Assembly (NCBI GenBank): GCA_002269645.1
Contig: NIVC01004903.1
Coordinates: forward strand, 1-31,890
From: Macrostomum lignano
Taxonomy: Eukaryota
Length of the DNA stretch: 31,890 bases
Direction: 5' to 3'
The notes under the pieces: model-generated
The model's input: the letters and a program-made list of their open reading frames with translations, nothing else
Told to the model about the DNA's origin: nothing
The model's database searches: none
In this document: piece after piece, positions 1 through 19,600 of the stretch
Numbering within the stretch: position 1 is the stretch's first letter
How the letters are laid out: every line of letters starts with the position of its first letter
Position numbers and translations under genes: made by a program

Positions 1-136
1 CCCAGCCAAATAGTAACCATGGCAACCAAACTGCTAGCGCGGCGGCGGCCGGCAACGCATTTTGCTTTCAACTTGGCGGTTTCAACGCTCATTTAGCGAG
101 ACAGAATTGACTGATCTTTGTTTGACCTTTTATAAG

Positions 137-193
137 GATGGCTTTCGGAAGCCAATGACACTGCAGGATTCTGCGATTGCTGATGGTGTTGAG
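137..193 (+). CDS. VPS13: VPS13-like exon (DGFRKPMTLQDSAIADGVE), phase 0-0
   Basis: Acceptor ttttataag at 135-136, donor GAG|gtgagc at 194; 19 open codons. Confidence 0.55.
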
Positions 194-3100
194 GTGAGCG
201 TTTGAAGGTCAAAAGTTTGTTAGCTTGCAAAGTTCCCCATTGGCTAGATTTTCACTGGGGATGTGGGGTGAAATTTTTATCCTTAACTGTGATCTAGTTG
301 TGAGATTTCGATCACATGGTGAGATTTTGCGCTTAGAGTGAGATTTAGAACATATAATGAGATTTTGATCACAGGGTAAGATTTTGATCAAAGGGTGAGA
401 TTTTAATCACAGGGTGAGAATTCTATCCCAAATTCGAATCTAGCGTGAGATTTTGATGCCGAACTGTGAGATTTTGTTCGGACAATGAAAATATTTTGTT
501 TAACTGTTGAACCTGTTGCCCCAACACTCGCAGCTGCTCAGCACCGAGACTATTTGTCTATCGCTGCCTGCTCCTACTTTGATCTTCAAATCACGACTCA
601 ATATTAGAATTGCTCCTTCCGCTGTGAGTAGCGCTGTTTCCATTGTCAACACTTGGCAACCGTTGCTAAGGCCTCAACAGACCGCTGGTGAGAGAGCAGT
701 TGTTATTTTAATGAGTCTTTTTTGTCCAAACCTTTGCCTTGAATTATTATTTAAAAAGAAATCAAACTACTTGAAGTAGTTTAAATGAGTTTGAAAAAGT
801 AATTCAATGTAGATTAGTTATTATTAAAACAAAATTGCACGCACACTTGCCTTAATATGAGTAGTTATTCTGTTTTTTGTCTTATTTTTTAAATATTTTC
901 ATTTCTCTGCCAAGTTTTTTTACAACACAAGTCGCCAATATTGCAGCCACCACCTCAGCGTCTCCAGCCTCATCTAAGATGGTAATGATAGATAGAAATA
1001 TTCTAATTACAAAACTCAAGCTCTGCTTGTTTGGCGCTAGTCAAATTTATCTACTCAATACCCACACCGTGTTAATGGTGTTGAATGTTTCTTTCTATAA
1101 TTTTGCATGCCTACTGAGTATTGAAGACTAATAAAAACTCTTGTTGAGTGTAGTGTAAATCTTTTTACCATAAACCACAGATAATAGAATTATCTAGATG
1201 GACAACTGAAGCAGGCACATTTACTAAGTAAAACAGCTTTCTACTTTCAGTTCAGTAGCAAAGAAGAATACATAAGCTGTTTTATAAATTTAAAGGCAGC
1301 TGAAATCACTTTGATAAGTTTAGAAGCCAAAGCTTGCAAGCGTAAACAACTTGCTAATTGGTTCTGCCACAATGTACATTGCCCAGTCCACTGAAATGTA
1401 CATGGCAGCTTTAGGCTGGAATTCCGAGAAAGGCAATAAAAATTGGGGCGGGCGGAGGGGTGGGGTAGTGTGGAAAGGCGCGGTTTGGGCTTTAAGCTGA
1501 GGGGGGTAAGAGCCAATAAATGAGTTTAAATGGCTTTAAAAATGCATTAGAATGCTTTAGTTTGACTTACTACTGAACTGAAAGTAGCTGGCACGCAAAT
1601 GTGCTGAGTGGCCCATTTAGTTATTATAGTATGTGCTTTAAACTGATTTAATCTGATTTGTTGTGACTGTTAATATAAAATACTACTGACATTTTAATTA
1701 CTAGTAGTATGTTGCGCGCGCGACTATTTTGCCAACAGTGTTCTGCGAAGTTATAATAAATTCCTAAATGACATTGCTAATTTGCAGTTTGGCAGCTTGA
1801 CTGTCGCTACAAATACCGTTTCCATGGTGATTGGCGACTCACCCACTGGCGCAGGCAGCGTTGCGTTTAGCCTTGACCATCTCACAGTTGGCTTTGAACA
1901 TGTGAGTGTGGGCCAGCATCTCTTTTAGCCGTAGTGTTCTGTCAGCATGTCTGTTTGGCTTTGCACCTGGCAATTGTCTCTCTCTGTGTTTTTGTATCCT
2001 CGTGTCTGTGTTCTTGTGTCCTCTTGTTGTGTTTTGGTTTTTGTGTCCTTGTGTCCTTGTCTCTTTATATCTGTGTCCTCGTGCCTTATATTTTCTTTGT
2101 GTCCTTGTGTCTGCATCTGTGCTGTGTGTCCTTTCTGTATCCTTGCATCTTTGTCTACACATTCCCATATTAACTGCAGGCCTCCTGCTCTGCGACCTTC
2201 GAACGCCCATCCGCCAGCGCCTCGCTGACCAGCACAAGCGCGGAACTCATTGAAGAGCCTCTGCTGATTCTGGAGACTCCTTCATCTGATAGCTATCAGT
2301 CGGCCTGCACTTATCCGCGATTCCAACTTGCGGCCAACTGGTCTGCCGATGTTACATCCGTAGTGCTGTCCTGTCCGCTTCACAGAATCTGCTTGGTCGT
2401 GTCGCCTGCCGTAGCCGCTGCGATCGCTCAGTTAGTCGAAAATTTGCGTCAAGCGTTTGCCGGAAGTAGACCAAGTACTAAAAATGACGATATCGGACGT
2501 GTACATGTCGCAGGAAATGAAACTGAACATGAACCACCTAATAGCTTTAATGGTAACGATTCTGGACAAGAGAAACCAACTGGAAATGGTTCCGATGACG
2601 CTAGTAAGTGCAAAAATCAAACCGGAACTATTTCTAGTAACGGAAATGGACGGAAAAATCGTACCGGAAGTGGTTCGAATGGAAATACAGTTCGAGAAAC
2701 TCGAACCAGAGGCGTGTCAGTTGACGGAACTAGACGCGAGAATCGAACCGGAAGTGGGTCAGGTGACGGAACTAGACGCGAGAATCGAACCGGAAGTGGG
2801 TCAGGTGACGGAACTAGACGCGAGAATCGAACCGGAAGTGGGTCAGGTGACGGAACTGGACGCGAGAATCAAACCGGAAGTGGGTCAGGTGACGGAACTA
2901 GACGCGAGAATCAAACCGGAAGTGGGTCAGGTGACGGAACTAGACGCGAGAATCGAACCGGAAGTGAGTCAGGTGACGGAACTGGACGTGAGAATCGAAC
3001 CGGAAGTGGGTCAGGTGACGGAACTGGACGTGAGAATCGAACCGGAAGTGGGTCAGGTGACGGAACTGGACGCGAGAATGGAACCGGAACCGGAAACGGA

Positions 3101-6100
3101 AGCCAAGCGTGGAAGTTCCGCGTCGACCTGCACAGCATTGGCATTCTGTTACGTTTGGATTCGAACCTACTAACAACAATGACAACGACGCCTGACGGCG
3201 CAGCTTGCCAGCGCTGCAGAGGCTCCGGCAGAGGCTGTAGAAACGTTGCCAACCTCAGCATCGACAACGTCGGTCCCGTATGGTTGAAAACCAAATTAAC
3301 TGGCGTCAAGCGTCGTTTCGTGCGATTGAAACCCGACGCAGCGGCTGCTGTCGAACGGCTTTACCGACGCTGGCTGTCTACGCCGGTCTCGTCGGTATTG
3401 TCAAATCAATCGTCAGTGGAGCTGGTCGATTCCGACCAATGGAGAGTCTGTTTTGAACAATTGGTCAATGACAACGCTATTACTTCTAGCAGTAGTATTA
3501 GCAGTAGTATGGAGGTCGGCATGACGATGTTACAGCCGAAATCGCGACGTCTCTACCGACGCTGCCTTCCTGGATTTGTCGGGCAAGTCGAATTTTCGCA
3601 ACAGCCTGACAAAGGAGAAGTTAATCGTCCAGTTCGATTCCAGATCAAGCTGGGCCGCTTGCAGGTGGACCAGTCGTGTCCTCAGGCGCCCGACCAGTTC
3701 AGGGTGCCGCTGTCCTTGAAGGCAAGGCCTAAAGCTGACGTCCTTGGTGAAGGTCGTCTTTTAGGAGCGGATTTGAAAGTCTGCATGGCTGCTGCCGGTT
3801 CTGCTGAAGTCGAGGATGATGGAGCGTGAGTCTGCTAATCTTCGATAATCTATCGCTAATTCTACATAATCCATCGCTAATCTTATATAATCCATCGCTA
3901 ATCTTCGATAATTCATCGCTAATCTTATATAATCCATCGCTAATCTTACATAATCCATCGCTTATCTTAGATAATCCATCGCTAATCTTAGATAATCCAT
4001 CGCTAATCTTACATAATCCATCGCTAATCTTAGATAATCCATCGCTAATCTTCGATAATATGTCGCTAATCTTAGATAATCCATCGCTAATCTTCGATAA
4101 TATGTCGCTAATCTTAGATAATCCATCGCTAATCTTCGATAATATGTCGCTAATCTTAGATAATCCATCGCTGATCTTACATAATCCATCGCTAATCTTA
4201 AATAATCCATCGCTGAATTTACATCACCCAGGTCTGCCCAGCCGCCACCGCTGCACATCTCTGAGATGTCGCTCGCACTCGGTCGCCTGGACCTCTGCTA
4301 CGACCCGGCGTTCTTCGTCCGCCTGCTGGCCACGCTGACGCCCCAGTCTGACGCGCCATCGAGCGGTGTTCGCATCGACCGGTTCCAACTGTTGCGCAAT
4401 CTGCGTTTGTACGCCGAAAATCTGCCGTTGCGAACGTCAGAATCTGCGGCCCAAGGCAACGGCTGGCGTCTTCGAGCCACGGTTCCCGCCGGCAACGCTC
4501 TCGGAGTCGCCTGGCCGGACAACGACGGTGGCGACGCCCAGCAGTGGGCCAGGAGGGAGTTCAAGCGGCTGATTAAGCGTCGGCCAGGGATGGCCGTCAC
4601 CCTGCCGCTGGGCTGCCTGCTCGGCACCTGTCGTGAGTTATTTTTCTATATTCTAATTTTTAGTTGATTTGTTGACGATATTACGCAGCAAATTTTATGG
4701 AAGAATCCAGGGCTTCCTCTAACGATTTTCTAAAAATTTCTTAGCGATTCCCCCGGAAGTCTCTTGGAATTTCCCAAAAAGTCCTCAGGGATTTCCCAGA
4801 ATTCCTCAGGGATTCCCCAGAATTCCTCAGGGATTCCCCCCAGAATTCCTCAGGGATTCCCCCAGAATTCCTCAGGGATTCCCCAGAATTCCTCAGGGAT
4901 TCCCCCAGAATTCCTCAGGGATTCCCCCAAAATTCCTCAGGGATTCCCCCAGAATTCCTCAGGGATTCCCCTAGAACTCCTCAGGGATTTCCCAGAATTT
5001 TTCAGGGATTGCTCCAGAAATTTCCAGAAAAAATCCAGAAAAACTCCCTAATCGTCTCCTAAAGATTTTTGCAAAAGATTTTCTCCTTCTCCATGTGGAA
5101 CGAAAATTTCCATGGTTGAATACTAGCGTTAATTTAGTTAAGAGTTCTGTCAAAGAACTTAAGCAAGATTGGTATTTGAAATTATCTAAAAAATTCCTAA
5201 AAATCGATTTTTTTGTAGTGCGTCGCAAAGAGTTTACACCTGTTCAACTGTCATCGTGGATGCAGTCGGCTCTGTCGTCAACAAAATCGACGCCGATTGC
5301 CATTGTCGATGTCGACGTGCCCGACAGTTCAGCGACGTCCGCTGCCGCGTTGCTTCATCAACTTGGTAGATGCTGTCCAAGCGAGCAAATTGTAGCCGTG
5401 GATTCGAACTCCGGACTACTGCTAACAACTGCTCGCCTGATTGAGCTGCACGTAGAGGCGGCTGGAGCTGCTGCAGCTTCAGTTCCGCCTGTGCGTCGTC
5501 AGTTCCGCTTGCTAACGCAACAGTCGGGTGACGGCGGGTGCAGCGACGGTGCTGATGCTGTTGAAAACGTTGAAGCCACCGTTGACGGCGTGCGGCTGCT
5601 GCCTGGCGGGGAGACCCTCGCCACTGGGCCTGAGTTTGCCAGGGTAAGTGTGGAGGCAAGTGCGGAAGCTTCTCGTAGGGGGTGTGAGAGTTAAGGACCA
5701 TAGACAGTCAGTGAAGAGGGATAGAGAGGTGGTGGGTGTGAGATATAAGGGCCATGGACAGTCATTGGGGAGGGATAGAAAGGTGGTGGGTGTGAGAGAT
5801 AAGGGCCATAGACAGTCAGTGGGGAGGGATAGAGGGGTGGTGGGTGTGAGAGATAAGGGCCATAGACAGTCAATGGAGAGGGATAGAGAGGTGGTGGGTG
5901 TGAGAGATAAGGGCCATAGACAGTCAGTGGGGAGGGATAGAGGGTGGTGGGTGTGAGAGATAAGGGCCATAGACAGTCAGTGGAGAGGGATAGAAAGGTG
6001 GTGGGGCATGAAGAAAAGGGTCATCGACAACGTGGTGGGGGTAGAAAGTCGCAAAGTTTGCCAGTTAGTAGAAACTAGACGGTTTGAAGCGATATGCAAG

Positions 6101-6253
6101 TGTGAAAATCGGTTTAGAGTGATCTGCAAGAGTGAAAAATATTTTTTTATATTATAACTTTTCGCATATGTGAGCTGAAGTAAATACATGTGTATAATTT
6201 TTTTTCAGAAATTCTTGGAACTAATGCTACCCGAAAACGACACGGCCTTTTAA
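137..6253 (+). CDS. VPS13: VPS13A/C-like bulk lipid transfer protein (RBG repeats, WWE-like insert, C-terminal PH-like domain), 5'-partial, spliced; lacks VAB and most of ATG2_C
   Basis: Hand-built exons 137-193, 534-687, 932-981, 1788-1901, 2180-3825, 4232-4632, 5219-5643, 6209-6253 have GT..AG boundaries with matching phases and total 2892 nt = 964 codons ending TAA. Motif order matches VPS13A as recalled: VDLHSIGILL (LALQDVGISL), VANLSIDNVGPVW (VAYIGITSSDVVW), MTMLQPKSRRLYRRCLPG (MKILQPHVIALRRNYLPA), FQIKLGRLQVD, ISEMSLALGRLDLCYDPAFF (IKYFKVLIQEMDLRLDLGF), TGPEFARKFL (KTPEDARWIL). Exon structure between 932 and 1788 is uncertain. Confidence 0.8.
245..480. repeat. Degenerate ~19-nt tandem repeat (GTGAGATTTTGATCACAGG) in intron 194-533
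   Basis: Recurrent TGAGATTTT core at ~19-nt spacing. Confidence 0.75.
534..687 (+). CDS. VPS13: VPS13-like exon (LLSTETICLSLP...NIRIAPSAVSSAVSIVNTWQPLL...), phase 0-1
   Basis: Acceptor cactcgcag at 532-533, donor G|gtgaga at 688. RBG-type strand then helix pattern. An alternative donor gtgagt exists at 624. Confidence 0.65.
932..981 (+). CDS. VPS13: VPS13-like exon (VANIAATTSASPASSKM), phase 1-0; may extend further 3'
   Basis: Acceptor acacaag at 930-931 matches the phase-1 donor at 688. The donor gtaatg at 982 is weak and the frame stays open to 1131. Confidence 0.45.
1788..1901 (+). CDS. VPS13: VPS13-like exon (FGSLTVATNTVSMVIGD...SVAFSLDHLTVGFEH), phase 0-0
   Basis: gctaatttgcag acceptor, donor gtgagt at 1902; 38 codons with alternating hydrophobic beta-strand pattern. 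Confidence 0.75.
1960..2160. repeat. Degenerate TGTGTC(CT) low-complexity repeat in intron 1902-2179
   Basis: Repeated tgtgtc/tgtgtt motifs with an almost A-free + strand. Confidence 0.75.
2180..3825 (+). CDS. VPS13: Large VPS13-like exon: RBG helix, low-complexity/repeat linker, WWE-like segment and last RBG strands; phase 0-2
   Basis: Acceptor taactgcag at 2178-2179, in frame with ORF 2363..3829. Donor gc|gtgagt at 3826 pre-empts the TGA. Confidence 0.85.
2722..3088 (+). repeat. Coding 42-nt tandem repeat (~9 copies; GSGSGDGTRRENRT)
   Basis: Directly visible in DNA and in the ORF 2363 translation. Confidence 0.95.
3833..4214. repeat. 21-nt minisatellite (ATAATCCATCGCTAATCTTAG), ~18 copies, fills intron 3826-4231
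   Basis: Direct tandem periodicity; ORFs 3826, 3761 and 3962 are 7-aa repeat read-throughs. Confidence 0.95.
4232..4632 (+). CDS. VPS13: VPS13-like exon (ISEMSLALGRLDLCYDPAFFVRLL...PGMAVTLPLGCLLGTC), phase 2-1
   Basis: Acceptor catcacccag at 4230-4231, donor gtgagt at 4633; in frame with ORF 4266..4667. Confidence 0.85.
4778..5015. repeat. 21-23-nt quasi-palindromic minisatellite (CCCAGAATTCCTCAGGGATTC with variable C-run), ~10 copies, intron 4633-5218
   Basis: Direct tandem periodicity; GAATTCC-TCA-GGGATTC dyad. Confidence 0.9.
5219..5643 (+). CDS. VPS13: VPS13-like exon, C-terminal PH-like region (GLLLTTARLIEL...TGPEFAR), phase 1-0
   Basis: Acceptor ttttttgtag at 5217-5218, donor AGG|gtaagt at 5644; in frame with ORF 5095..5694. 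Confidence 0.8.
5678..6005. repeat. 54-nt G-rich minisatellite, cluster 1 (~6 copies), intron 5644-6208
   Basis: GGTGGTGGGTGTGAGAGATAAGGGCCATAGACAGTCAGTGGGGAGGGATAGA periodicity. Confidence 0.9.
6209..6253 (+). CDS. VPS13: Probable terminal exon KFLELMLPENDTAF*
   Basis: Strong acceptor ttttttttcag at 6207-6208, phase 0, TAA at 6251-6253. It completes a PEFARKFLELM helix like the VPS13 C-terminal helix, and AATAAA follows. Confidence 0.65.
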   Translation, partial: KFLELMLPENDTAF

Positions 6254-6664: not shown

Positions 6665-7290
6665 TGTGAGATAAGGGGCATAAACAGGGGGTGCGATAGA
6701 TAAGGACCGTAGATAGAGGGGTGGTGGGTGTGAGAGATAAGAGCCATATACAGTCAGTGGGGAGGGATAGAAGGGTGGTGGGTGTGAGAGATAAGAGCCA
6801 TATACAGTCAGTGGGGAGGGATAGAAGGGTGGTGGGTGTGAGAGATAAGAGCCATATACAGTCAGTGGGGAGGGATAGAAGGGTGGTGGGTGTGAGAGAT
6901 AAGAGCCATATACAGTCAGTGGGGAGGGATAGAAGGGTGGTGGGTGTGAGAGATAAGAGCCATATACAGTCAGTGGGGAGGGATAGAAGGGTGGTGGGTG
7001 TGAGAAATAAAGGCCATAGGCAGTCAGTCAGTGGGCAGGGATGAAGGGGTGGTGGGTGTGAGAGTTAAGGGTCATAGACAGCAGTGAGGGTGGGATAGAG
7101 GGGTGGTGGGTATGAGAGATAAGGGTCATAGGCAGTCAGTGGGCAGGGATGGAGGGTTGGTGGGTATGAGAGTTAAGGGTCATAGGCGGTCAGTGGGGAG
7201 GGATAGGGGGGTGTTGGGTGTAAGAAATAAGAGCCATATGCAATTAGAAATAAGAACAGAAGGTGGTTGGATGGCAAAGATAAGAGCCAT
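6665..7290. repeat. 54-nt G-rich minisatellite, cluster 2 (~11 copies, degenerate ends), same family as 5678-6005
   Basis: Same consensus with AAGAGCCATATAC variant; ORF 6721 is an 18-aa repeat. Confidence 0.9.
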
Positions 7291-7825: not shown

Positions 7826-8228
7826 ACATCAAGACTCAATAAATGTCGCCAAAGTACATCAAGACTCGGTAAATGTCGCCAAAGTACATCAAGACTCAAT
7901 AAATGTCGCCAAAGTACATCAAGACTCGGTAAATGTCGCCAAAGTACATCAAGACTCGGTAAATGTCGCCAAAGTACATCAAGACTCGGTAAATGTCGCC
8001 AAAGTACATCAAGACTCGGTAAATGTCGCCAAAGTACATCAAGACTCAATAAATGTCGCCAAAGTACATCAAGACTCGGTAAATGTCGCCAAAGTACATC
8101 AAGACTCGGTAAATGTCGCCAAAGTACATCAAGACTCGGTAAATGTCGCCAAAGTACATCAAGACTCGGTAAATGTCGCCAAAGTACATCAAGACTCAAT
8201 AAATGCCGCCAAAGTACATCAAGACTCA
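7826..8228. repeat. 30-nt minisatellite (ACATCAAGACTC[GG/AA]TAAATGTCGCCAAAGT), ~13.5 copies
   Basis: Exact 30-nt period with two unit variants. Confidence 0.95.
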
Positions 8229-8411: not shown

Positions 8412-9475
8412 ATGATAAAAACATTTCTGAGCAGCCTTGGCTTAGCCCCAACCGAGCTGAGCCTGTTGAGCACAGCATCTCCGCCTCGAATCCTGTCGAC
8501 TCTGGTGGGAACAGGCCACTTCGAGCAGGGCATCTGGCGGTTGCCTTCGGGCGAGGCGGTTGCCTACGAGATCATCAACTGGGGCGACACGCACAGCAGC
8601 CGCAACCGTCTGCCCGCCTTCGATTCGTGCACTGACGGCGAGTCGAAGAAACTCTCTGGCATTCTAACGGAAGAGGAAGAACTGGTTGAGGATGAGAATG
8701 AGCTGTCAGATCAAGATGCAGAGGTTCCGTGCGCTTCTGCGAACGATTTGTGAGTTGTCGCTGGTGTGCTTATGCTGGGCTATGCAGTGACACCATGGTT
8801 TTAAGCCTATAGGATTCTTAATGTCCAATGGCATCATCCTCTCCTCTCCTCTCCTCTCCTCTCCTCTCCTCCCCTGTCCTCTCCTCTCCTCTCCTGTCCT
8901 CTCCTCTCCTTTCTCCTCTCCTCTCCTCTCCTTTCTCCTCTCCTCTCCTCTCCTCTTCTCTTCTCTTCTCTCTCCTCTCCTCTCCTCTCCTCTCCTCTCG
9001 CCTCTCCTCTCGCCTCTCCTCTCTTAGCTGGTCCGCAGTCCTTAGCTCAGGGCAGAAAAACTTTGCCGACCCCTGCAGTCCTGGGAATTTCAGTTGCCTC
9101 AGTGTTTTTCTGTCCCGCAGGCCGGGGCCGCCACTGCTCGACCGGCTGCCGCCAGACTGTCTGGCCCGAATCGCTGCCAGCCTCAACCTACTCGAACTGG
9201 CCCGCGTCTGCAAGGTTTCGCCAGCTTTTCGTCGCCTCTGCGGCGTCGTGGACGTCAACATCGACTCGCCGACAACCGACCGAGGCGCCAGCGACGCCTG
9301 CTGGGTTGAACGAATTCGACGCCATTTTGGCGCCGATTATCTGCGCAACTGTTGGGCGTTTGTTAATAAAGACACCTGCTGCGGTAGGAACCCGTTCGCG
9401 AGGCTCTACCTGCACGCGCTGCTGGGGCTGTACAGGGCTCAGCCTGAGCAGCTGCTCTTTGACGGACGTGCTCAA
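8412..9475 (+). CDS. F-box protein, 5' exons (8412-8749 and 9121-9475); substrate-binding domain not recognised
   Basis: Exon 1 is open from ATG 8412 (true start uncertain), has an acidic tract EEEELVEDENELSDQD and donor gtgagt at 8750 (phase 2). Acceptor tttttctgtcccgcag at 9119-9120 is phase 2. F-box motif LLDRLPPDCLARIAASLNLLELARVCKVSPAFRRLC at 9134-9241. Donor CAA|gtgaga at 9476 is phase 0. Confidence 0.8.
8839..9023. repeat. (CTCTC)n pyrimidine microsatellite in intron 8750-9120
   Basis: Pure C/T pentamer-type repeat. Confidence 0.95.
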
Positions 9476-9506
9476 GTGAGATTTGAAACCAGTTGAAAAT
9501 TATCCA

Positions 9507-10321
9507 TTTGACACCGCAGACAGGCAACTCATTTTGGCGCCGCAGACAGGCGACTAATTTTGGCGCCACAGACAGGCAACTCATTTTGACGCCGCAGACA
9601 GGCAACTCATTTTGGCGCCGCAGACAGGCGACTAATTTTGGCGCCACAGACAGGCAACTCATTTTGGCGCCACAGACAGGCAACTCATTTTGACGCCGCA
9701 GACAGGCAACTCATTTTGGCGCCGCAGACAGGCGACTAATTTTGGCGCCACAGACAGGCAACTCATTTTGGCGCCACAGACAGGCAACTCATTTTGGCGC
9801 CACAGACAGGCAACTCATTTTGGCGCCACAGACAGGCAACTCATTTTGGCGCCGCAAACAGGCAACTCATTTTGGCGCCACAGACAGGCAACTCATTTTG
9901 GCGCCGCAGACAGGCGACTAATTTTGGCGCCACAGACAGGCAACTCATTTTGGCGCCACAGACAGACAACTCATTTTGGCGCCGCAAACAGGCAACTCAT
10001 TTTGGCGCCACAGACAGGCAACTCATTTTGGCGCCGCAGACAGGCGACTAATTTTGGCGCCACAGACAGGCAACTCATTTTGGCGCCACAGACAGGCAAC
10101 TCATTTTGGCGCCACAGACAGGCAACTCATTTTGGCGCCACAGACAGGCAACTCATTTTGGCGCCACAGACAGGCGACTAATTTTGGCGCCGCAAACAGG
10201 CAACTCATTTTGGCGCCGCAGACAGGCGACTAATTTTGGCGCCACAGACAGGCAACTCATTTTGGCGCCACAGACAGGCAACTCATTTTGGCGCCACAGA
10301 CAGGCAACTCATTTTGGCGCC
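9507..10321. repeat. 26-nt minisatellite (TTTTGGCGCCACAGACAGGCAACTCA), ~31 copies
   Basis: Direct tandem units with a few recurrent variants and no unique spacers. Confidence 0.95.
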
Positions 10322-10663: not shown

Positions 10664-13600
10664 TTTGCACCTGCGTATATCAGCCCCATTGAGTGTCATT
10701 TCTAAGCTCTCCATTTAATTCTATATATTGACAGCGACAGGGCTAGTTAGAGATGCTGAGAGTAGCGGGCTCTGCGTCATCTTTGCACCTGTGTATATCA
10801 GCCCCATTGAGTGTCATTTCTAAGCTCTCCATTTAATTCTATATATTGACAGCGACAGGGCTAGTTAGAGATGCTGAGAGTAGCGGCTCTGCGTCATCTT
10901 TGCACCTGTGTATATCAGCCCCATTGAGTGTCATTTCTAAGCTCTCCATTTAATTCTATATATTGACAGCGACAGGGCTAGTTAGAGATGCTGAGAGTAG
11001 CGGGCTCTGCGTCATCTTTGCACCTGTGTATATCAGCCCCATTGAGTGTCATTTCTAAGCTCTCCATTTAATTCTATATATTGACAGCGACAGGGCTAGT
11101 TAGAGATGCTGAGAGTAGCGGCTCTGCGTCATCTTTGCACCTGTGTATATCAGCCCCATTGAGTGTCATTTCTAAGCTCTCCATTTAATTCTATATATTG
11201 ACAGCGACAGGGCTAGTTAGAGATGCTGAGAGTAGCGGGCTCTGCGTCATCTTTGCACCTGTGTATATCAGCCCCATTGAGTGTCATTTCTAAGCTCTCC
11301 ATTTAATTCTATATATTGACAGCGACAGGGCTAGTTAGAGATGCTGAGAGTAGCGGGCTCTGCGTCATCTTTGCACCTGTGTATATCAGCCCCATTGAGT
11401 GTCATTTCTAAGCTCTCCATTTAATTCTATATATTGACAGCGACAGGGCTAGTTAGAGATGCTGAGAGTAGCGGGCTCTGCGTCATCTTTGCACCTGTGT
11501 ATATCAGCCCCATTGAGTGTCATTTCTAAGCTCTCCATTTAATTCTATATATTGACAGCGACAGGGCTAGTTAGAGATGCTGAGAGTAGCGGGCTCTGCG
11601 TCATCTTTGCACCTGTGTATATCAGCCCCATTGAGTGTCATTTCTAAGCTCTCCATTTAATTCTATATATTGACAGCGACAGGGCTAGTTAGAGATGCTG
11701 AGAGTAGCGGGCTCTGCGTCATCTTTGCACCTGTGTATATCAGCCCCATTGAGTGTCATTTCTAAGCTCTCCATTTAATTCTATATATTGACAGCGACAG
11801 GGCTAGTTAGAGATGCTGAGAGTAGCGGGCTCTGCGTCATCTTTGCACCTGTGTATATCAGCCCCATTGAGTGTCATTTCTAAGCTCTCCATTTAATTCT
11901 ATATATTGACAGCGACAGGGCTAGTTAGAGATGCTGAGAGTAGCGGGCTCTGCGTCATCTTTGCACCTGTGTATATCAGCCCCATTGAGTGTCATTTCTA
12001 AGCTCTCCATTTAATTCTATATATTGACAGCGACAGGGCTAGTTAGAGATGCTGAGAGTAGCGGGCTCTGCGTCATCTTTGCACCTGTGTATATCAGCCC
12101 CATTGAGTGTCATTTCTAAGCTCTCCATTTAATTCTATATATTGACAGCGACAGGGCTAGTTAGAGATGCTGAGAGTAGCGGGCTCTGCGTCATCTTTGC
12201 ACCTGTGTATATCAGCCCCATTGAGTGTCATTTCTAAGCTCTCCATTTAATTCTATATATTGACAGCGACAGGGCTAGTTAGAGATGCTGAGAGTAGCGG
12301 GCTCTGCGTCATCTTTGCACCTGTGTATATCAGCCCCATTGAGTGTCATTTCTAAGCTCTCCATTTAATTCTATATATTGACAGCGACAGGGCTAGTTAG
12401 AGATGCTGAGAGTAGCGGGCTCTGCGTCATCTTTGCACCTGTGTATATCAGCCCCATTGAGTGTCATTTCTAAGCTCTCCATTTAATTCTATATATTGAC
12501 AGCGACAGGGCTAGTTAGAGATGCTGAGAGTAGCGGGCTCTGCGTCATCTTTGCACCTGTGTATATCAGCCCCATTGAGTGTCATTTCTAAGCTCTCCAT
12601 TTAATTCTATATATTGACAGCGACAGGGCTAGTTAGAGATGCTGAGAGTAGCGGGCTCTGCGTCATCTTTGCACCTGTGTATATCAGCCCCATTGAGTGT
12701 CATTTCTAAGCTCTCCATTTAATTCTATATATTGACAGCGACAGGGCTAGTTAGAGATGCTGAGAGTAGCGGGCTCTGCGTCATCTTTGCACCTGTGTAT
12801 ATCAGCCCCATTGAGTGTCATTTCTAAGCTCTCCATTTAATTCTATATATTGACAGCGACAGGGCTAGTTAGAGATGCTGAGAGTAGCGGGCTCTGCGTC
12901 ATCTTTGCACCTGTGTATATCAGCCCCATTGAGTGTCATTTCTAAGCTCTCCATTTAATTCTATATATTGACAGCGACAGGGCTAGTTAGAGATGCTGAG
13001 AGTAGCGGGCTCTGCGTCATCTTTGCACCTGTGTATATCAGCCCCATTGAGTGTCATTTCTAAGCTCTCCATTTAATTCTATATATTGACAGCGACAGGG
13101 CTAGTTAGAGATGCTGAGAGTAGCGGGCTCTGCGTCATCTTTGCACCTGTGTATATCAGCCCCATTGAGTGTCATTTCTAAGCTCTCCATTTAATTCTAT
13201 ATATTGACAGCGACAGGGCTAGTTAGAGATGCTGAGAGTAGCGGGCTCTGCGTCATCTTTGCACCTGTGTATATCAGCCCCATTGAGTGTCATTTCTAAG
13301 CTCTCCATTTAATTCTATATATTGACAGCGACAGGGCTAGTTAGAGATGCTGAGAGTAGCGGGCTCTGCGTCATCTTTGCACCTGTGTATATCAGCCCCA
13401 TTGAGTGTCATTTCTAAGCTCTCCATTTAATTCTATATATTGACAGCGACAGGGCTAGTTAGAGATGCTGAGAGTAGCGGGCTCTGCGTCATCTTTGCAC
13501 CTGTGTATATCAGCCCCATTGAGTGTCATTTCTAAGCTCTCCATTTAATTCTATATATTGACAGCGACAGGGCTAGTTAGAGATGCTGAGAGTAGCGGGC

Positions 13601-16600
13601 TCTGCGTCATCTTTGCACCTGTGTATATCAGCCCCATTGAGTGTCATTTCTAAGCTCTCCATTTAATTCTATATATTGACAGCGACAGGGCTAGTTAGAG
13701 ATGCTGAGAGTAGCGGGCTCTGCGTCATCTTTGCACCTGTGTATATCAGCCCCATTGAGTGTCATTTCTAAGCTCTCCATTTAATTCTATATATTGACAG
13801 CGACAGGGCTAGTTAGAGATGCTGAGAGTAGCGGGCTCTGCGTCATCTTTGCACCTGTGTATATCAGCCCCATTGAGTGTCATTTCTAAGCTCTCCATTT
13901 AATTCTATATATTGACAGCGACAGGGCTAGTTAGAGATGCTGAGAGTAGCGGGCTCTGCGTCATCTTTGCACCTGTGTATATCAGCCCCATTGAGTGTCA
14001 TTTCTAAGCTCTCCATTTAATTCTATATATTGACAGCGACAGGGCTAGTTAGAGATGCTGAGAGTAGCGGGCTCTGCGTCATCTTTGCACCTGTGTATAT
14101 CAGCCCCATTGAGTGTCATTTCTAAGCTCTCCATTTAATTCTATATATTGACAGCGACAGGGCTAGTTAGAGATGCTGAGAGTAGCGGGCTCTGCGTCAT
14201 CTTTGCACCTGTGTATATCAGCCCCATTGAGTGTCATTTCTAAGCTCTCCATTTAATTCTATATATTGACAGCGACAGGGCTAGTTAGAGATGCTGAGAG
14301 TAGCGGGCTCTGCGTCATCTTTGCACCTGTGTATATCAGCCCCATTGAGTGTCATTTCTAAGCTCTCCATTTAATTCTATATATTGACAGCGACAGGGCT
14401 AGTTAGAGATGCTGAGAGTAGCGGGCTCTGCGTCATCTTTGCACCTGTGTATATCAGCCCCATTGAGTGTCATTTCTAAGCTCTCCATTTAATTCTATAT
14501 ATTGACAGCGACAGGGCTAGTTAGAGATGCTGAGAGTAGCGGGCTCTGCGTCATCTTTGCACCTGTGTATATCAGCCCCATTGAGTGTCATTTCTAAGCT
14601 CTCCATTTAATTCTATATATTGACAGCGACAGGGCTAGTTAGAGATGCTGAGAGTAGCGGGCTCTGCGTCATCTTTGCACCTGTGTATATCAGCCCCATT
14701 GAGTGTCATTTCTAAGCTCTCCATTTAATTCTATATATTGACAGCGACAGGGCTAGTTAGAGATGCTGAGAGTAGCGGGCTCTGCGTCATCTTTGCACCT
14801 GTGTATATCAGCCCCATTGAGTGTCATTTCTAAGCTCTCCATTTAATTCTATATATTGACAGCGACAGGGCTAGTTAGAGATGCTGAGAGTAGCGGGCTC
14901 TGCGTCATCTTTGCACCTGTGTATATCAGCCCCATTGAGTGTCATTTCTAAGCTCTCCATTTAATTCTATATATTGACAGCGACAGGGCTAGTTAGAGAT
15001 GCTGAGAGTAGCGGGCTCTGCGTCATCTTTGCACCTGTGTATATCAGCCCCATTGAGTGTCATTTCTAAGCTCTCCATTTAATTCTATATATTGACAGCG
15101 ACAGGGCTAGTTAGAGATGCTGAGAGTAGCGGGCTCTGCGTCATCTTTGCACCTGTGTATATCAGCCCCATTGAGTGTCATTTCTAAGCTCTCCATTTAA
15201 TTCTATATATTGACAGCGACAGGGCTAGTTAGAGATGCTGAGAGTAGCGGGCTCTGCGTCATCTTTGCACCTGTGTATATCAGCCCCATTGAGTGTCATT
15301 TCTAAGCTCTCCATTTAATTCTATATATTGACAGCGACAGGGCTAGTTAGAGATGCTGAGAGTAGCGGGCTCTGCGTCATCTTTGCACCTGTGTATATCA
15401 GCCCCATTGAGTGTCATTTCTAAGCTCTCCATTTAATTCTATATATTGACAGCGACAGGGCTAGTTAGAGATGCTGAGAGTAGCGGGCTCTGCGTCATCT
15501 TTGCACCTGTGTATATCAGCCCCATTGAGTGTCATTTCTAAGCTCTCCATTTAATTCTATATATTGACAGCGACAGGGCTAGTTAGAGATGCTGAGAGTA
15601 GCGGGCTCTGCGTCATCTTTGCACCTGTGTATATCAGCCCCATTGAGTGTCATTTCTAAGCTCTCCATTTAATTCTATATATTGACAGCGACAGGGCTAG
15701 TTAGAGATGCTGAGAGTAGCGGGCTCTGCGTCATCTTTGCACCTGTGTATATCAGCCCCATTGAGTGTCATTTCTAAGCTCTCCATTTAATTCTATATAT
15801 TGACAGCGACAGGGCTAGTTAGAGATGCTGAGAGTAGCGGGCTCTGCGTCATCTTTGCACCTGTGTATATCAGCCCCATTGAGTGTCATTTCTAAGCTCT
15901 CCATTTAATTCTATATATTGACAGCGACAGGGCTAGTTAGAGATGCTGAGAGTAGCGGGCTCTGCGTCATCTTTGCACCTGTGTATATCAGCCCCATTGA
16001 GTGTCATTTCTAAGCTCTCCATTTAATTCTATATATTGACAGCGACAGGGCTAGTTAGAGATGCTGAGAGTAGCGGGCTCTGCGTCATCTTTGCACCTGT
16101 GTATATCAGCCCCATTGAGTGTCATTTCTAAGCTCTCCATTTAATTCTATATATTGACAGCGACAGGGCTAGTTAGAGATGCTGAGAGTAGCGGGCTCTG
16201 CGTCATCTTTGCACCTGTGTATATCAGCCCCATTGAGTGTCATTTCTAAGCTCTCCATTTAATTCTATATATTGACAGCGACAGGGCTAGTTAGAGATGC
16301 TGAGAGTAGCGGGCTCTGCGTCATCTTTGCACCTGTGTATATCAGCCCCATTGAGTGTCATTTCTAAGCTCTCCATTTAATTCTATATATTGACAGCGAC
16401 AGGGCTAGTTAGAGATGCTGAGAGTAGCGGGCTCTGCGTCATCTTTGCACCTGTGTATATCAGCCCCATTGAGTGTCATTTCTAAGCTCTCCATTTAATT
16501 CTATATATTGACAGCGACAGGGCTAGTTAGAGATGCTGAGAGTAGCGGGCTCTGCGTCATCTTTGCACCTGTGTATATCAGCCCCATTGAGTGTCATTTC

Positions 16601-19600
16601 TAAGCTCTCCATTTAATTCTATATATTGACAGCGACAGGGCTAGTTAGAGATGCTGAGAGTAGCGGGCTCTGCGTCATCTTTGCACCTGTGTATATCAGC
16701 CCCATTGAGTGTCATTTCTAAGCTCTCCATTTAATTCTATATATTGACAGCGACAGGGCTAGTTAGAGATGCTGAGAGTAGCGGGCTCTGCGTCATCTTT
16801 GCACCTGTGTATATCAGCCCCATTGAGTGTCATTTCTAAGCTCTCCATTTAATTCTATATATTGACAGCGACAGGGCTAGTTAGAGATGCTGAGAGTAGC
16901 GGGCTCTGCGTCATCTTTGCACCTGTGTATATCAGCCCCATTGAGTGTCATTTCTAAGCTCTCCATTTAATTCTATATATTGACAGCGACAGGGCTAGTT
17001 AGAGATGCTGAGAGTAGCGGGCTCTGCGTCATCTTTGCACCTGTGTATATCAGCCCCATTGAGTGTCATTTCTAAGCTCTCCATTTAATTCTATATATTG
17101 ACAGCGACAGGGCTAGTTAGAGATGCTGAGAGTAGCGGGCTCTGCGTCATCTTTGCACCTGTGTATATCAGCCCCATTGAGTGTCATTTCTAAGCTCTCC
17201 ATTTAATTCTATATATTGACAGCGACAGGGCTAGTTAGAGATGCTGAGAGTAGCGGGCTCTGCGTCATCTTTGCACCTGTGTATATCAGCCCCATTGAGT
17301 GTCATTTCTAAGCTCTCCATTTAATTCTATATATTGACAGCGACAGGGCTAGTTAGAGATGCTGAGAGTAGCGGGCTCTGCGTCATCTTTGCACCTGTGT
17401 ATATCAGCCCCATTGAGTGTCATTTCTAAGCTCTCCATTTAATTCTATATATTGACAGCGACAGGGCTAGTTAGAGATGCTGAGAGTAGCGGGCTCTGCG
17501 TCATCTTTGCACCTGTGTATATCAGCCCCATTGAGTGTCATTTCTAAGCTCTCCATTTAATTCTATATATTGACAGCGACAGGGCTAGTTAGAGATGCTG
17601 AGAGTAGCGGGCTCTGCGTCATCTTTGCACCTGTGTATATCAGCCCCATTGAGTGTCATTTCTAAGCTCTCCATTTAATTCTATATATTGACAGCGACAG
17701 GGCTAGTTAGAGATGCTGAGAGTAGCGGGCTCTGCGTCATCTTTGCACCTGTGTATATCAGCCCCATTGAGTGTCATTTCTAAGCTCTCCATTTAATTCT
17801 ATATATTGACAGCGACAGGGCTAGTTAGAGATGCTGAGAGTAGCGGGCTCTGCGTCATCTTTGCACCTGTGTATATCAGCCCCATTGAGTGTCATTTCTA
17901 AGCTCTCCATTTAATTCTATATATTGACAGCGACAGGGCTAGTTAGAGATGCTGAGAGTAGCGGGCTCTGCGTCATCTTTGCACCTGTGTATATCAGCCC
18001 CATTGAGTGTCATTTCTAAGCTCTCCATTTAATTCTATATATTGACAGCGACAGGGCTAGTTAGAGATGCTGAGAGTAGCGGGCTCTGCGTCATCTTTGC
18101 ACCTGTGTATATCAGCCCCATTGAGTGTCATTTCTAAGCTCTCCATTTAATTCTATATATTGACAGCGACAGGGCTAGTTAGAGATGCTGAGAGTAGCGG
18201 GCTCTGCGTCATCTTTGCACCTGTGTATATCAGCCCCATTGAGTGTCATTTCTAAGCTCTCCATTTAATTCTATATATTGACAGCGACAGGGCTAGTTAG
18301 AGATGCTGAGAGTAGCGGGCTCTGCGTCATCTTTGCACCTGTGTATATCAGCCCCATTGAGTGTCATTTCTAAGCTCTCCATTTAATTCTATATATTGAC
18401 AGCGACAGGGCTAGTTAGAGATGCTGAGAGTAGCGGGCTCTGCGTCATCTTTGCACCTGTGTATATCAGCCCCATTGAGTGTCATTTCTAAGCTCTCCAT
18501 TTAATTCTATATATTGACAGCGACAGGGCTAGTTAGAGATGCTGAGAGTAGCGGGCTCTGCGTCATCTTTGCACCTGTGTATATCAGCCCCATTGAGTGT
18601 CATTTCTAAGCTCTCCATTTAATTCTATATATTGACAGCGACAGGGCTAGTTAGAGATGCTGAGAGTAGCGGGCTCTGCGTCATCTTTGCACCTGTGTAT
18701 ATCAGCCCCATTGAGTGTCATTTCTAAGCTCTCCATTTAATTCTATATATTGACAGCGACAGGGCTAGTTAGAGATGCTGAGAGTAGCGGGCTCTGCGTC
18801 ATCTTTGCACCTGTGTATATCAGCCCCATTGAGTGTCATTTCTAAGCTCTCCATTTAATTCTATATATTGACAGCGACAGGGCTAGTTAGAGATGCTGAG
18901 AGTAGCGGGCTCTGCGTCATCTTTGCACCTGTGTATATCAGCCCCATTGAGTGTCATTTCTAAGCTCTCCATTTAATTCTATATATTGACAGCGACAGGG
19001 CTAGTTAGAGATGCTGAGAGTAGCGGGCTCTGCGTCATCTTTGCACCTGTGTATATCAGCCCCATTGAGTGTCATTTCTAAGCTCTCCATTTAATTCTAT
19101 ATATTGACAGCGACAGGGCTAGTTAGAGATGCTGAGAGTAGCGGGCTCTGCGTCATCTTTGCACCTGTGTATATCAGCCCCATTGAGTGTCATTTCTAAG
19201 CTCTCCATTTAATTCTATATATTGACAGCGACAGGGCTAGTTAGAGATGCTGAGAGTAGCGGGCTCTGCGTCATCTTTGCACCTGTGTATATCAGCCCCA
19301 TTGAGTGTCATTTCTAAGCTCTCCATTTAATTCTATATATTGACAGCGACAGGGCTAGTTAGAGATGCTGAGAGTAGCGGGCTCTGCGTCATCTTTGCAC
19401 CTGTGTATATCAGCCCCATTGAGTGTCATTTCTAAGCTCTCCATTTAATTCTATATATTGACAGCGACAGGGCTAGTTAGAGATGCTGAGAGTAGCGGGC
19501 TCTGCGTCATCTTTGCACCTGTGTATATCAGCCCCATTGAGTGTCATTTCTAAGCTCTCCATTTAATTCTATATATTGACAGCGACAGGGCTAGTTAGAG

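What the first reader, a model, noticed from the sequence alone, without database searches (positions are those of the whole stretch)
2462..3109. VPS13A/C-like protein in which the VAB adaptor-binding domain is replaced by a 216-aa repeat linker
Seen: inside one uninterrupted exon (2180-3825), the RBG helix ICLVVSPAVAAAIAQLVENLRQAFA is joined to WKFRVDLHSIGILL by only 216 aa of G/S/N/T/R-rich sequence that includes ~9 GSGSGDGTRRENRT repeats. Recalled knowledge: in VPS13A/C the matching segments (LNITLSK..LVKAFTEA and ITLALQDVGISL) flank the six-repeat VAB domain of several hundred aa, which binds Pro-X-Pro adaptors. Inference: a precise VAB deletion or replacement that keeps the lipid groove and the WWE-like insert, giving an adaptor-independent mini-VPS13. 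No intron here could hide VAB exons. If the linker were itself spliced out, VAB would still be absent.
Basis: partly seen in the sequence, partly recalled or inferred. Interest (0 to 1): 0.72.

Follow-up and report, generated by a model that had tools for sequence, protein, structure and literature searches.

The report
Flatworm VPS13-like protein without VAB domain
A transcribed gene of the flatworm Macrostomum lignano encodes a very divergent relative of the lipid-bridge proteins VPS13A/C in which the adaptor-binding (VAB) domain is absent, a floppy 216-residue loop made mostly of an expanded 42-base repeat sits where it should be, and the C-terminal membrane-binding helices also go undetected, so it is a natural 'stripped-down' VPS13.

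Summary
Window 2462-3109 encodes 216 aa of G/S/T/R/N-rich sequence inside one open exon (2180-3825), including a 42-bp x 9.3 tandem array at 2701-3089.

The window is Macrostomum lignano. My 8-exon model is letter for letter the C-terminal 971 aa of the RNA-seq-based GenBank protein PAA62105.1 (2408 aa), which keeps all nine repeats in this frame.

The protein gets no Pfam call above threshold and no phmmer hit outside its own species. Profile-profile comparison with 29 VPS13A/C proteins gives three collinear anchors that clearly beat shuffled controls:
- N-terminal region, z 9.2.
- Middle region, z 8.1.
- The segment straight after the linker, z 11.5, which matches the post-VAB RBG11 + WWE insert + 'LQxDNQ' + RBG12 region.

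No VAB signal exists in the protein or in any frame of three loci. Only 584 structured residues lie where references have 1300, so a 610-aa VAB cannot fit. ATG2_C helices are also undetectable, and a PH domain is doubtful.

Weak points: the N-side junction is only marginally mapped (z 2.7), the groove structure could not be modelled, and I could not check whether a canonical VPS13A/C also exists in this genome.

Verdict: a real, expressed, VAB-less variant derived from VPS13A/C. It is a new variant of a known kind, of moderate interest.

The parts
97..193 (+). Coding exon. The gene starts upstream of the window; about 1437 aa precede it.
   Evidence: AG/GT borders. Part of the exact match to PAA62105.1.
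534..687 (+). Coding exon (RBG strands plus the helix LNIRIAPSAVSSAVSIVNTW).
947..981 (+). Small coding exon of 35 nt.
1788..1901 (+). Coding exon.
2180..3825 (+). Large exon that holds the pre-linker flank, the linker and the RBG11/WWE-like region.
   Evidence: Open frame 2174-3826. AG/GT borders. Exact in PAA62105.1.
2180..2461 (+). Pre-linker flank of 94 aa, ending in the helix ICLVVSPAVAAAIAQLVENLRQAFA. It is RBG-like, and its equivalence to the last pre-VAB unit (RBG10) is only weakly supported.
   Evidence: hhalign of the pre-VAB references against this region scores 21.1 against shuffles at 14.2+-2.5. There is a competing weak match to reference 1203-1354. The length budget between the significant anchors favours a position at or near the VAB site.
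2462..3109 (+). Linker of 216 aa, of low complexity and predicted disordered, at the place where VPS13A/C carry the VAB domain.
   Evidence: It has no counterpart in the references.
2562..2700 (+). Degenerate older copies of the 42-bp unit.
   Evidence: 77-83% matches to the array in BLAST.
2701..3089 (+). Coding minisatellite, 42 bp x 9.3, giving GSGSGDGTRRENRT x9. Every unit contains CAG|GTGACG.
   Evidence: TRF. The same nine units are in PAA62105.1. A second homeolog also has nine units, with different substitutions.
3110..3244 (+). First strand(s) after the linker (WKFRVDLHSIGILLRLDS), matching the first post-VAB strand of VPS13A/C, followed by a Cys/Gly-rich lineage-specific insert.
   Evidence: hhalign alignment. 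MAFFT.
3245..3589 (+). Region homologous to the WWE insert of VPS13A/C. It keeps all 6 invariant residues of the reference set.
   Evidence: The WWE-region HMM hits only this exon among 1699 ORFs, E 8e-5. Alignment A3. AF2 pLDDT 81.6. The fold search is not significant.
3653..3673 (+). GRLQVDQ, the counterpart of the conserved 'NRLQxDNQ' motif of VPS13.
4232..4632 (+). Coding exon. The RBG11/12 homology continues (ISEMSLALGRLDLCYDPAFFVRLL matches KVLIQEMxxKVDxGFLxAxxxLF).
5219..5643 (+). Coding exon: the end of the RBG12-like region, then a short tail. No ATG2_C helices are detectable, and a PH-like remnant is doubtful.
6209..6253 (+). Last coding exon (KFLELMLPENDTAF) plus the stop codon.

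Best explanation
The window carries the 3' third of Macrostomum lignano gene BOX15_Mlig000660g6 (protein PAA62105.1, 2408 aa).

The protein is a highly divergent descendant of the metazoan VPS13A/C lineage of bridge-like lipid-transfer proteins:
- It keeps a VPS13-type N-terminal region and a middle RBG region.
- It keeps the C-terminal RBG11-WWE-RBG12 block.
- The roughly 600-aa VAB adaptor-binding domain, which in VPS13 is an insert in the loop before RBG11, is gone.
- The amphipathic ATG2_C helices are not detectable either.

The loop where the VAB would sit is now 216 aa of Gly/Ser/Thr/Arg/Asn-rich, presumably disordered sequence. About 80% of it grew by expansion of a 42-bp coding minisatellite, a process rampant in this genome.

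Inferred mechanism, not shown here:
- The RBG units before and after the loop still abut to form one hydrophobic groove. They do so when the VAB is left out in silico (Levine 2022).
- The protein would therefore still be a lipid bridge, but it cannot be recruited by Pro-X-Pro adaptors or Rab7 through a VAB.
- It must be targeted by what is left (the WWE insert, the short C-terminal tail, N-terminal determinants), or it acts as a specialised or regulatory paralog.
For: Identity and expression:
- UniRef and GenBank members are all M. lignano.
- The GenBank annotation of Mlig_3_7 is built from RNA-seq, StringTie/TACO and TransDecoder (PMC5730564).
- My spliced model is an exact substring of PAA62105.1 with all nine repeats in frame.
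- The window is 99.9% identical to that locus.

Constraint:
- The ORF is intact in three loci at 98-99% aa identity.
- Against a homeologous locus there is 1 difference in 2917 coding nt and 172 in 3483 non-coding nt.

Homology to VPS13A/C (hhalign score against shuffles):
- N region: 42.2 against 17.4+-2.7.
- Middle region: 38.4 against 16.9+-2.7.
- Post-VAB block: 50.9 against 17.5+-2.9, probability 70-82%.
- The three anchors are collinear.
- Pfam VPS13_N gives a weak hit, E 0.0045.
- UniProt's own names are 'VPS13 domain-' and 'VPS13_C domain-containing protein'.

WWE region:
- All 6 invariant columns are kept.
- The HMM hit is specific to this exon.
- The same profile hits the annotated WWE region of human VPS13C and VPS13A in the PDB.

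VAB absent:
- hhalign P 0.7-0.95.
- Pfam VPS13_VAB finds nothing, although it hits the control references at 1e-42 and 1e-47.
- Six-frame scans of the window, L001 and L002 are negative.
- Between the middle and post anchors the references have 1300 aa and this protein has 584 aa excluding the linker.

ATG2_C absent.

Genome context: tandem repeats make up 15% of the genome and many lie in this window.
Against: - No Pfam VPS13 family reaches its curated threshold.
- phmmer finds no relative outside M. lignano among 1.84 billion representatives, using the 241-aa post-linker piece.
- phmmer finds none in the PDB.
- The mapping of the pre-linker flank to the last pre-VAB RBG unit is marginal (z 2.7). 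The same helix also resembles an RBG unit at reference 1310-1355.
- AF2 gave only low confidence for the RBG parts (pLDDT below 50), so groove continuity is not shown.
- Foldseek gave no significant match for the WWE-like model.
- Two homeolog CDS models skip six repeat units, so the mRNA copy number is uncertain.
- Lipid transfer and targeting are pure inference.
Confidence: 0.72

Rival explanations
1. This is a lineage-specific extra paralog that is decaying or has taken on a new function. A canonical VAB-containing VPS13A/C does the standard job elsewhere in the genome. This copy has shed its targeting modules and may no longer act as an autonomous lipid bridge. This rival concerns function and orthology, not the anatomy, so it overlaps the best explanation.
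For: The divergence is extreme: nothing found outside the species. Several modules are lost at once, namely VAB and ATG2_C, and perhaps PH. The linker evolves quickly between homeologs, with 5 substitutions in 128 aligned linker columns.
Against: The roughly 2400-aa ORF is intact in three loci. Exons are almost invariant while introns differ. The gene is transcribed. The invariant residues of the WWE region are kept. I could not search the M. lignano proteome for another VPS13, so the premise is untested.
Confidence: 0.3
2. The deletion is larger than, or offset from, the VAB. The linker would replace the VAB together with one or more neighbouring RBG units, so the junction is not 'precise'.
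For: The best-scoring local match of the pre-linker flank is to an RBG unit at reference 1203-1354, score 27.2, P 0.027. The match to the true pre-VAB segment scores 21.1, P 0.04. The protein is about 1000 aa shorter than the references, which is more than a VAB.
Against: The significant middle anchor already places Mlig 943-1092 on reference 1125-1287, so a collinear match of 1470-1668 to reference 1203-1354 is impossible. From that anchor to the linker there are 580 aa against 688 aa in the references, which include about 100 aa of loops, leaving room for essentially all pre-VAB units. RBG units resemble each other by descent (Levine 2022), which explains the cross-match.
Confidence: 0.2
3. 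It belongs to a family that never had a VAB, such as ATG2, BLTP3/SHIP164 or BLTP1/2, and the VPS13 resemblance is generic RBG similarity.
For: At about 2400 aa its length is nearer to ATG2 than to VPS13. One homeolog is named 'FSA_C domain-containing protein' in UniRef. The N-terminal motif is shared by VPS13, ATG2 and BLTP3.
Against: Pfam ATG2_CAD, FSA_C and Apt1 give no hit at the E<=10 setting, whereas VPS13_N does. The strongest similarity (z 11.5) is to the VPS13A/C-specific RBG11 with its WWE insert and the LQxDNQ motif. The literature describes the WWE insert only for VPS13A and VPS13C. ATG2's hallmark ATG_C helices are absent. I had no ATG2 or BLTP3 profile of my own to run the reciprocal test.
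Confidence: 0.06
4. It is an assembly or annotation artefact: VAB exons were lost in a collapsed assembly, or the repeat is mis-assembled.
For: The genome is very repeat-rich. Public models disagree in this very stretch: some shift frame, others skip 252 nt.
Against: The same junction and nine-unit array occur in the window, in two contigs of Mlig_3_7 (L001, L002), and in models from the independent ML2 assembly. A second homeolog has nine units with its own substitutions. The exon is one continuous ORF. No VAB-like coding potential exists anywhere in about 45 kb around either locus.
Confidence: 0.02

Closest known systems
Metazoan VPS13A / VPS13C (chorein family bridge-like lipid transfer proteins)
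   Same: Collinear, statistically supported similarity in three regions: the N-terminal region, the middle RBG region, and the RBG11-WWE-'LQxDNQ'-RBG12 block. The WWE insert sits at the same position in RBG11.
   Different: There is no VAB domain and there are no ATG2_C amphipathic helices. No PH/VPS13_C Pfam domain is detectable. The protein is about 800-1300 aa shorter. It is too divergent for Pfam or phmmer. A 216-aa minisatellite-derived loop sits at the VAB position.
Engineered delta-VAB VPS13 constructs (for example VPS13C delta-VAB in PMC13430412; the in-silico VAB-omitted VPS13 of Levine 2022, PMC7613979)
   Same: The bridge domain is joined directly across the VAB insertion point. Modelling in Levine 2022 shows that RBG10 and RBG11 then abut normally.
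   Different: Those are laboratory constructs, and delta-VAB VPS13C loses Rab7 binding. This is a natural, expressed gene that also lacks ATG2_C.
Arabidopsis VPS13X (At3g50380), the most reduced VPS13 described by Levine 2022
   Same: A short VPS13 (9 RBG units) with altered accessory domains. It is a precedent for the trimming of VPS13 modules.
   Different: VPS13X keeps its VAB repeats, which is what identifies it as a VPS13, and loses only the PH domain. The flatworm protein loses the VAB.
ATG2
   Same: An RBG protein with a chorein-type N-terminus, no VAB, and a length of about 2000 aa.
   Different: ATG2 has ATG_C helices and no WWE insert. Pfam ATG2_CAD does not match this protein.

Membership tests
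VPS13 (Pfam-defined) | Pfam VPS13_N (PF12624), VPS13_M (PF25033), VPS13_VAB (PF25036) or VPS13_C (PF25037) above the gathering score | tested here: not met
   The only hit is VPS13_N, at 15.2 bits against a cut-off of 80, E 0.0045. The other three give nothing. Two control references give 1e-26 to 1e-263 for all four families. The precomputed Pfam field is '-' for all M. lignano copies.
VPS13 (homology) | N-terminal chorein/VPS13_N-type region | tested here: met
   hhalign maps reference 135-325 to Mlig 153-306, score 42.2 against shuffles 17.4+-2.7. The motif IEVHQLHVCYEDKS..PLLAGVAFEKL corresponds to NIHxRYED...PFSxGxTL.
VPS13 (homology) | Middle RBG region (VPS13_M) | tested here: met
   hhalign maps reference 1125-1287 to Mlig 943-1092, score 38.4 against 16.9+-2.7. 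hmmsearch gives a domain with i-E 3e-5.
VPS13 | VAB domain: six beta-sandwich repeats, each with an invariant Asn, inserted before the penultimate RBG unit. The literature treats it as the feature that identifies a VPS13. | tested here: not met
   hhalign P 0.69-0.95. No Pfam VAB hit. Six-frame HMM scans of the window, L001 and L002 give a best E of 0.3-0.7. The length budget leaves no room.
VPS13A/C subfamily | RBG11 carrying a WWE insert, followed by the LQxDNQ motif and RBG12 | tested here: met
   By sequence: hhalign probability 70-82%, score 50.9 against 17.5+-2.9. All 6 invariant columns of the WWE region are kept. The HMM hit is specific to this exon.
WWE domain (fold) | WWE alpha/beta fold. 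Pfam WWE is PF02825. | tested here: inconclusive
   No Pfam WWE hit. The AF2 model made with a VPS13A/C alignment has pLDDT 81.6. Foldseek against the PDB gives nothing with E<=0.001, and the highest-probability matches are WWE domains: HUWE1 at probability 0.41 and DTX1 at 0.38.
VPS13 / ATG2 | ATG2_C amphipathic helices after the last RBG unit | tested here: not met
   hhalign 10.8 against shuffles 12.1+-2.2. Six-frame scans are negative. About 16 aa lie where the references have about 150.
VPS13 | C-terminal PH domain (Pfam VPS13_C, PF25037) | tested here: inconclusive
   No Pfam hit. hhalign 13.8 against 11.3+-1.6. By eye the strand/helix pattern of the last 110 aa is PH-compatible, which is inference only.
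RBG / bridge-like lipid transfer proteins | A continuous hydrophobic beta-groove, and lipid transfer | not testable with these tools
   AF2 gave pLDDT below 50 for the RBG parts even with a 21-row alignment. No assay was possible.
ATG2 | Pfam ATG2_CAD (PF13329) / ATG_C | tested here: not met
   No hit at the E<=10 setting on the full-length protein. ATG_C is absent.
BLTP1 (Tweek/FSA) and BLTP2 (Hobbit) | Pfam FSA_C / Apt1 C-terminal regions | tested here: not met
   No hit in the Pfam scan at the E<=10 setting. The only link is a UniRef name, 'FSA_C domain-containing', on one homeolog.

The most novel reading that the evidence does not exclude
This would be the only VPS13A/C-type gene of Macrostomum, and perhaps of a wider flatworm clade. 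A free-living animal would then run its VPS13A/C function with a bridge that has lost the VAB and the ATG2_C helices, and possibly the PH domain. The bridge would be targeted instead through the retained WWE insert and/or the Arg/Ser/Thr-rich repeat loop, whose unit number may even be adjusted by splicing at the CAG|GTGACG site present in every unit. That would be a natural proof that VAB-adaptor recruitment is dispensable for a VPS13A/C-lineage bridge.
Probability: 0.2. Interest if true: 0.75.

Novelty: new variant of a known kind. Interest (0 to 1): 0.5.

Why it matters
The VAB domain is regarded as the signature of VPS13 proteins. It is the module through which adaptors (yeast Mcp1, Ypt35 and Spo71; human Rab7 for VPS13C) recruit the bridge to its acceptor organelle. 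In the papers I could search, only engineered delta-VAB constructs appear.

A naturally evolved, expressed and conserved VAB-less and ATG2_C-less derivative gives a test case for two questions. What is the minimal bridge? What can the poorly understood WWE insert do on its own? M. lignano has transgenesis and RNAi, so the case is experimentally tractable.

It also shows a coding minisatellite growing inside a tolerated surface loop of a large structural protein.

There is a practical point as well. Public models of this gene are wrong in this stretch (frame-shifting 13-nt and 5-nt 'introns', 252-nt skips), and current Pfam does not recognise the protein at all.

Tried and rejected
1. Pfam scans of each exon, the spliced peptide, and the 1503-aa and 2330-aa models gave nothing above threshold.

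2. The search for homologous proteins with the linker-less 746-aa peptide gave 0 hits. This turned out to be a limit of the tool, which appears not to return targets longer than about twice the query. A chimeric 2119-aa query (coral VPS13A N-terminus + M. lignano sequence) solved both problems.

3. phmmer against the PDB found nothing except the mis-framed repeat matching a phage tail-needle coiled coil, which is spurious.

4. An exact look-up of the ORF 2363-3829 found nothing on record.

5. MAFFT alignments meant to give AlphaFold an MSA across the junction failed. With contiguous references the pre-linker part was forced onto the VAB. With split references the pre and post rows were mixed. 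The groove-continuity prediction was therefore not attempted.

6. AF2 of the 421-aa post-linker block had pLDDT 44 overall. Foldseek on it and on the WWE-only model found no significant match.

7. hhalign -glob gave a trivial alignment.

8. I considered and rejected the frame-3 reading of the repeat (ELDARIEPEVGQVT) used by UniProt models. It needs 'introns' of 13 and 5 nt, and the RNA-based CDS uses frame 1.

9. I could not search the M. lignano genome or proteome for other VPS13 genes.

Full report
**What is in the sequence**

The window is eukaryotic DNA with GT-AG introns that are crowded with minisatellites (27 TRF rows). The frame 2174-3826 is open on the + strand. Translation of 2180-3827 reads ...ICLVVSPAVAAAIAQLVENLRQAFA, then 216 aa of G/S/T/R/N-rich sequence (nt 2462-3109), then WKFRVDLHSIGILL....

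TRF finds a 42-bp unit in 9.3 copies, with 95% matches and no indels, at 2701-3089. In this frame it gives GSGSGDGTRRENRT x9. BLAST self-matches at 77-83% show degenerate older units back to about 2562, so roughly four fifths of the linker derives from the repeat. The linker is 25% Gly and only 5% hydrophobic.

**Gene model, organism and expression**

I built an exon model from AG/GT sites: 97-193, 534-687, 947-981, 1788-1901, 2180-3825, 4232-4632, 5219-5643, and later 6209-6253.

An exhaustive HMMER search with the 241 aa that follow the linker found one protein among 1.84 billion representatives. It is a Macrostomum lignano UniRef entry named 'VPS13_C domain-containing protein'.

A later search and a cluster look-up gave three GenBank proteins from assembly Mlig_3_7:
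- PAA62105.1, 2408 aa.
- PAA50818.1, 2330 aa.
- PAA83878.1, 2322 aa.
They are 98-99% identical to each other.

The GenBank annotation of that assembly is built from RNA-seq (STAR, StringTie, TACO, a de novo transcriptome, TransDecoder; PMC5730564). My spliced 971-aa peptide is an exact substring, the C-terminus, of PAA62105.1, including all nine repeat units in this frame. The window is 99.9% identical to that locus over 16 kb.

So the gene is transcribed and the linker is part of the annotated coding sequence.

Against a homeologous locus, the coding parts differ at 1 of 2917 nt and the non-coding parts at 172 of 3483 positions. This is not a decaying pseudogene. A second homeolog, in an independent assembly, also has nine units, with its own amino-acid substitutions. 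The array is therefore inherited and is not an assembly accident.

**Is it a VPS13?**

By the usual tools it is not recognisable:
- No Pfam family reaches threshold. The only hit is VPS13_N, at 15 bits against a cut-off of 80.
- phmmer finds nothing in the PDB, even though human VPS13A and VPS13C chains are there.

I therefore collected 29 full-length metazoan VPS13A/C proteins (alignment A1) and compared profile segments with the flatworm protein using hhalign. Shuffled versions of the flatworm segment served as controls. Three anchors stand out, and they are collinear.

| Anchor | Reference | Flatworm (PAA50818.1 numbering) | Score | Shuffles |
|---|---|---|---|---|
| N-terminal | 135-325 | 153-306 | 42.2 | 17.4+-2.7 |
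| Middle | 1125-1287 | 943-1092 | 38.4 | 16.9+-2.7 |
| Post-VAB | 2588-2930 | 1804-2211 | 50.9 | 17.5+-2.9 |

The post-VAB anchor has a probability of 70-82%. Its alignment starts at the first strand after the linker: KFRVDLHSIGILL against EIxxSLQGxGLSL. It then runs through three further elements:
- The region that the literature calls the WWE insert of RBG11 in VPS13A/C.
- The NRLQxDNQ motif, here GRLQVDQ.
- The KVLIQEMxxKVDxGFL segment, here EMSLALGRLDLCYDPAFF.

In the WWE region the flatworm sequence keeps all six residues that are invariant in the reference set. The profile of this region hits human VPS13C 3106-3194 and VPS13A in the PDB.

An HMM of the region picks out only this exon among about 1700 six-frame ORFs, at E 8e-5. 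The same holds at the true locus.

An AlphaFold model of the region, made with the VPS13A/C rows as its alignment, has pLDDT 81.6. Foldseek finds no significant PDB match for it. The highest-probability hits are WWE domains, but the E-values are above 1. The WWE fold itself therefore stays unproven here.

**Is the VAB really missing, and missing here?**

- The VAB segment of the references gives no signal against the protein (P 0.69-0.95).
- Pfam VPS13_VAB is silent on it, while it scores 1e-42 and 1e-47 on two control references.
- A VAB HMM finds nothing in any frame of the window or of the two complete gene loci with 10-kb flanks (best E 0.3-0.7).
- The exon is one continuous ORF, so no intron can hide VAB exons at this spot.
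- Between the middle and post-VAB anchors the references have 1300 residues. The flatworm protein has 711, of which 127 are linker in that model. That leaves 584 residues for what takes 688 residues before the VAB in the references. A 610-residue VAB does not fit.

The C-side of the junction is thus well defined. The N-side is not:
- The pre-VAB reference segment scores only 21.1 against shuffles at 14.2+-2.5.
- The pre-linker helix also resembles another RBG unit, at reference 1310-1355. The collinear middle anchor excludes that match. RBG units are related to one another, which accounts for the cross-match.

I conclude that the linker sits at or very near the VAB insertion point. 'Precise' is not shown.

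The strongly conserved ATG2_C stretch of the references (LGLDVLGNPFG...) has no counterpart. hhalign scores below the shuffles, the six-frame scans are negative, and about 16 residues stand where the references have about 150. The C-terminal PH domain (Pfam VPS13_C) is not detected either (hhalign z about 1.6), although the last 110 residues could be a degenerate PH. The protein ends at ...KFLELMLPENDTAF (window 6209-6253).

**How it probably works**

Shown:
- An expressed, conserved, roughly 2400-aa protein homologous to VPS13A/C at both ends and in the middle.
- It has a WWE-region homolog and no detectable VAB or ATG2_C.
- A disordered, repeat-derived loop sits at the VAB position.

Inferred:
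- The VAB is an insert in an inter-RBG loop, and modelling of VPS13 without it places the flanking RBG units in direct continuity (Levine 2022). The flatworm protein can therefore still form one groove and move lipids.
- It cannot use the Pro-X-Pro adaptors or Rab7 through a VAB. Delta-VAB VPS13C loses Rab7 binding.
- The loop most likely arose when the VAB was lost, and it then grew by minisatellite expansion. That process affects 15% of this genome and almost every intron of this gene.
- Whether the loop has a role is unknown. Possible roles are a spacer or a multi-site phosphorylation target, since each unit holds an R-x-x-S.

**Rivals**

- Extra or decaying paralog. This concerns function and orthology only. 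I could not test whether a canonical VPS13A/C exists in the genome.
- A larger or offset deletion. This is possible for the N-side.
- ATG2 or another VAB-less RBG family. This is unlikely, because the strongest similarity is to the VPS13A/C-specific block, and Pfam ATG2_CAD, FSA_C and Apt1 do not match. I had no ATG2 profile of my own for the reciprocal test.
- Assembly or annotation artefact. This is excluded by three loci, two assemblies and an RNA-based CDS.

**Comparison and novelty**

The literature treats the VAB as the characteristic feature of VPS13. The most reduced natural member described, plant VPS13X, keeps it. The only VAB-less forms I found in the searchable papers are engineered. 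No paper mentions VPS13 together with Macrostomum.

The protein fails a defining feature, so I do not file it as a canonical VPS13. It is best described as a VAB-less derivative of the VPS13A/C lineage, a new variant of a known kind.

Interest is moderate (0.5):
- For: it is a natural minimal bridge in an experimentally tractable animal.
- Against: the species is fast-evolving and repeat-ridden, and function and orthology are unknown.

Noticed in passing
window 2498-2510 and about 3053-3057; UniRef A0A1I8IN26, A0A1I8JLW3, A0A1I8IWN8: UniProt models from the ML2 assembly read the repeat in another frame (ELDARIEPEVGQVT). They do so by inserting a 13-nt and a 5-nt GT..AG 'intron'. These are impossible introns, so this is a gene-prediction artefact. 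The mis-framed repeat even produces a spurious PDB hit to the P22 tail needle.
   Followed up: yes
window 2701-3089; GenBank PAA50818.1 and PAA83878.1: Two RNA-based homeolog models skip exactly six units (252 nt) inside the array, although the genomic locus of PAA50818.1 (L001, the one fetched and compared) has nine units. Every unit contains CAG|GTGACG, which can serve as both donor and acceptor. The skip is either a collapsed transcript assembly or real in-frame splicing within the repeat.
   Followed up: partly
window 10664-23713: A 118-bp satellite in 110.6 copies at 99% identity, 13 kb long, lies directly downstream of the gene. The homologous GenBank contig ends inside it.
   Followed up: no
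window 3834-4214, 4735-5019, 5680-6005, 6712-7239, 7826-8227, 9517-10321, 25020-26703, 28671-29229, 29594-30075, 30770-31178: Almost every intron and intergenic stretch holds its own minisatellite, with units of 14-60 bp and 6-88 copies. Their lengths differ between homeologous loci. This is the likely source of the coding repeat.
   Followed up: partly
window 8435-8751 and 9027-9480 (+): Two exon-like ORFs with splice-site-like borders lie downstream of the VPS13-like gene. The second has an F-box (Pfam PF00646, E 3e-5). No called gene covers this stretch in the gene lists returned for the homologous contigs. It is possibly an unannotated F-box gene.
   Followed up: no
window 5219-5643 and 6209-6253: The protein also lacks the ATG2_C amphipathic helices. 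It has at best a degenerate PH domain, and it ends only about 120 aa after the last aligned RBG12-like residue.
   Followed up: yes
window 1174-1630: An intronic segment of about 450 bp also occurs twice elsewhere in the homeologous contig L001 (85-86% identity, in both orientations). It is probably a dispersed repeat or mobile-element fragment.
   Followed up: no
window 3161-3240: A Cys/Gly/Arg-rich insert of about 25 aa (TPDGAACQRCRGSGRGCRN) lies between the first post-linker strand and the WWE-like region. It has no counterpart in the 29 references.
   Followed up: no
tool behaviour: the search for homologous proteins appears not to return targets longer than about twice the query. A negative result with a fragment of a giant protein is therefore not informative.
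   Followed up: yes
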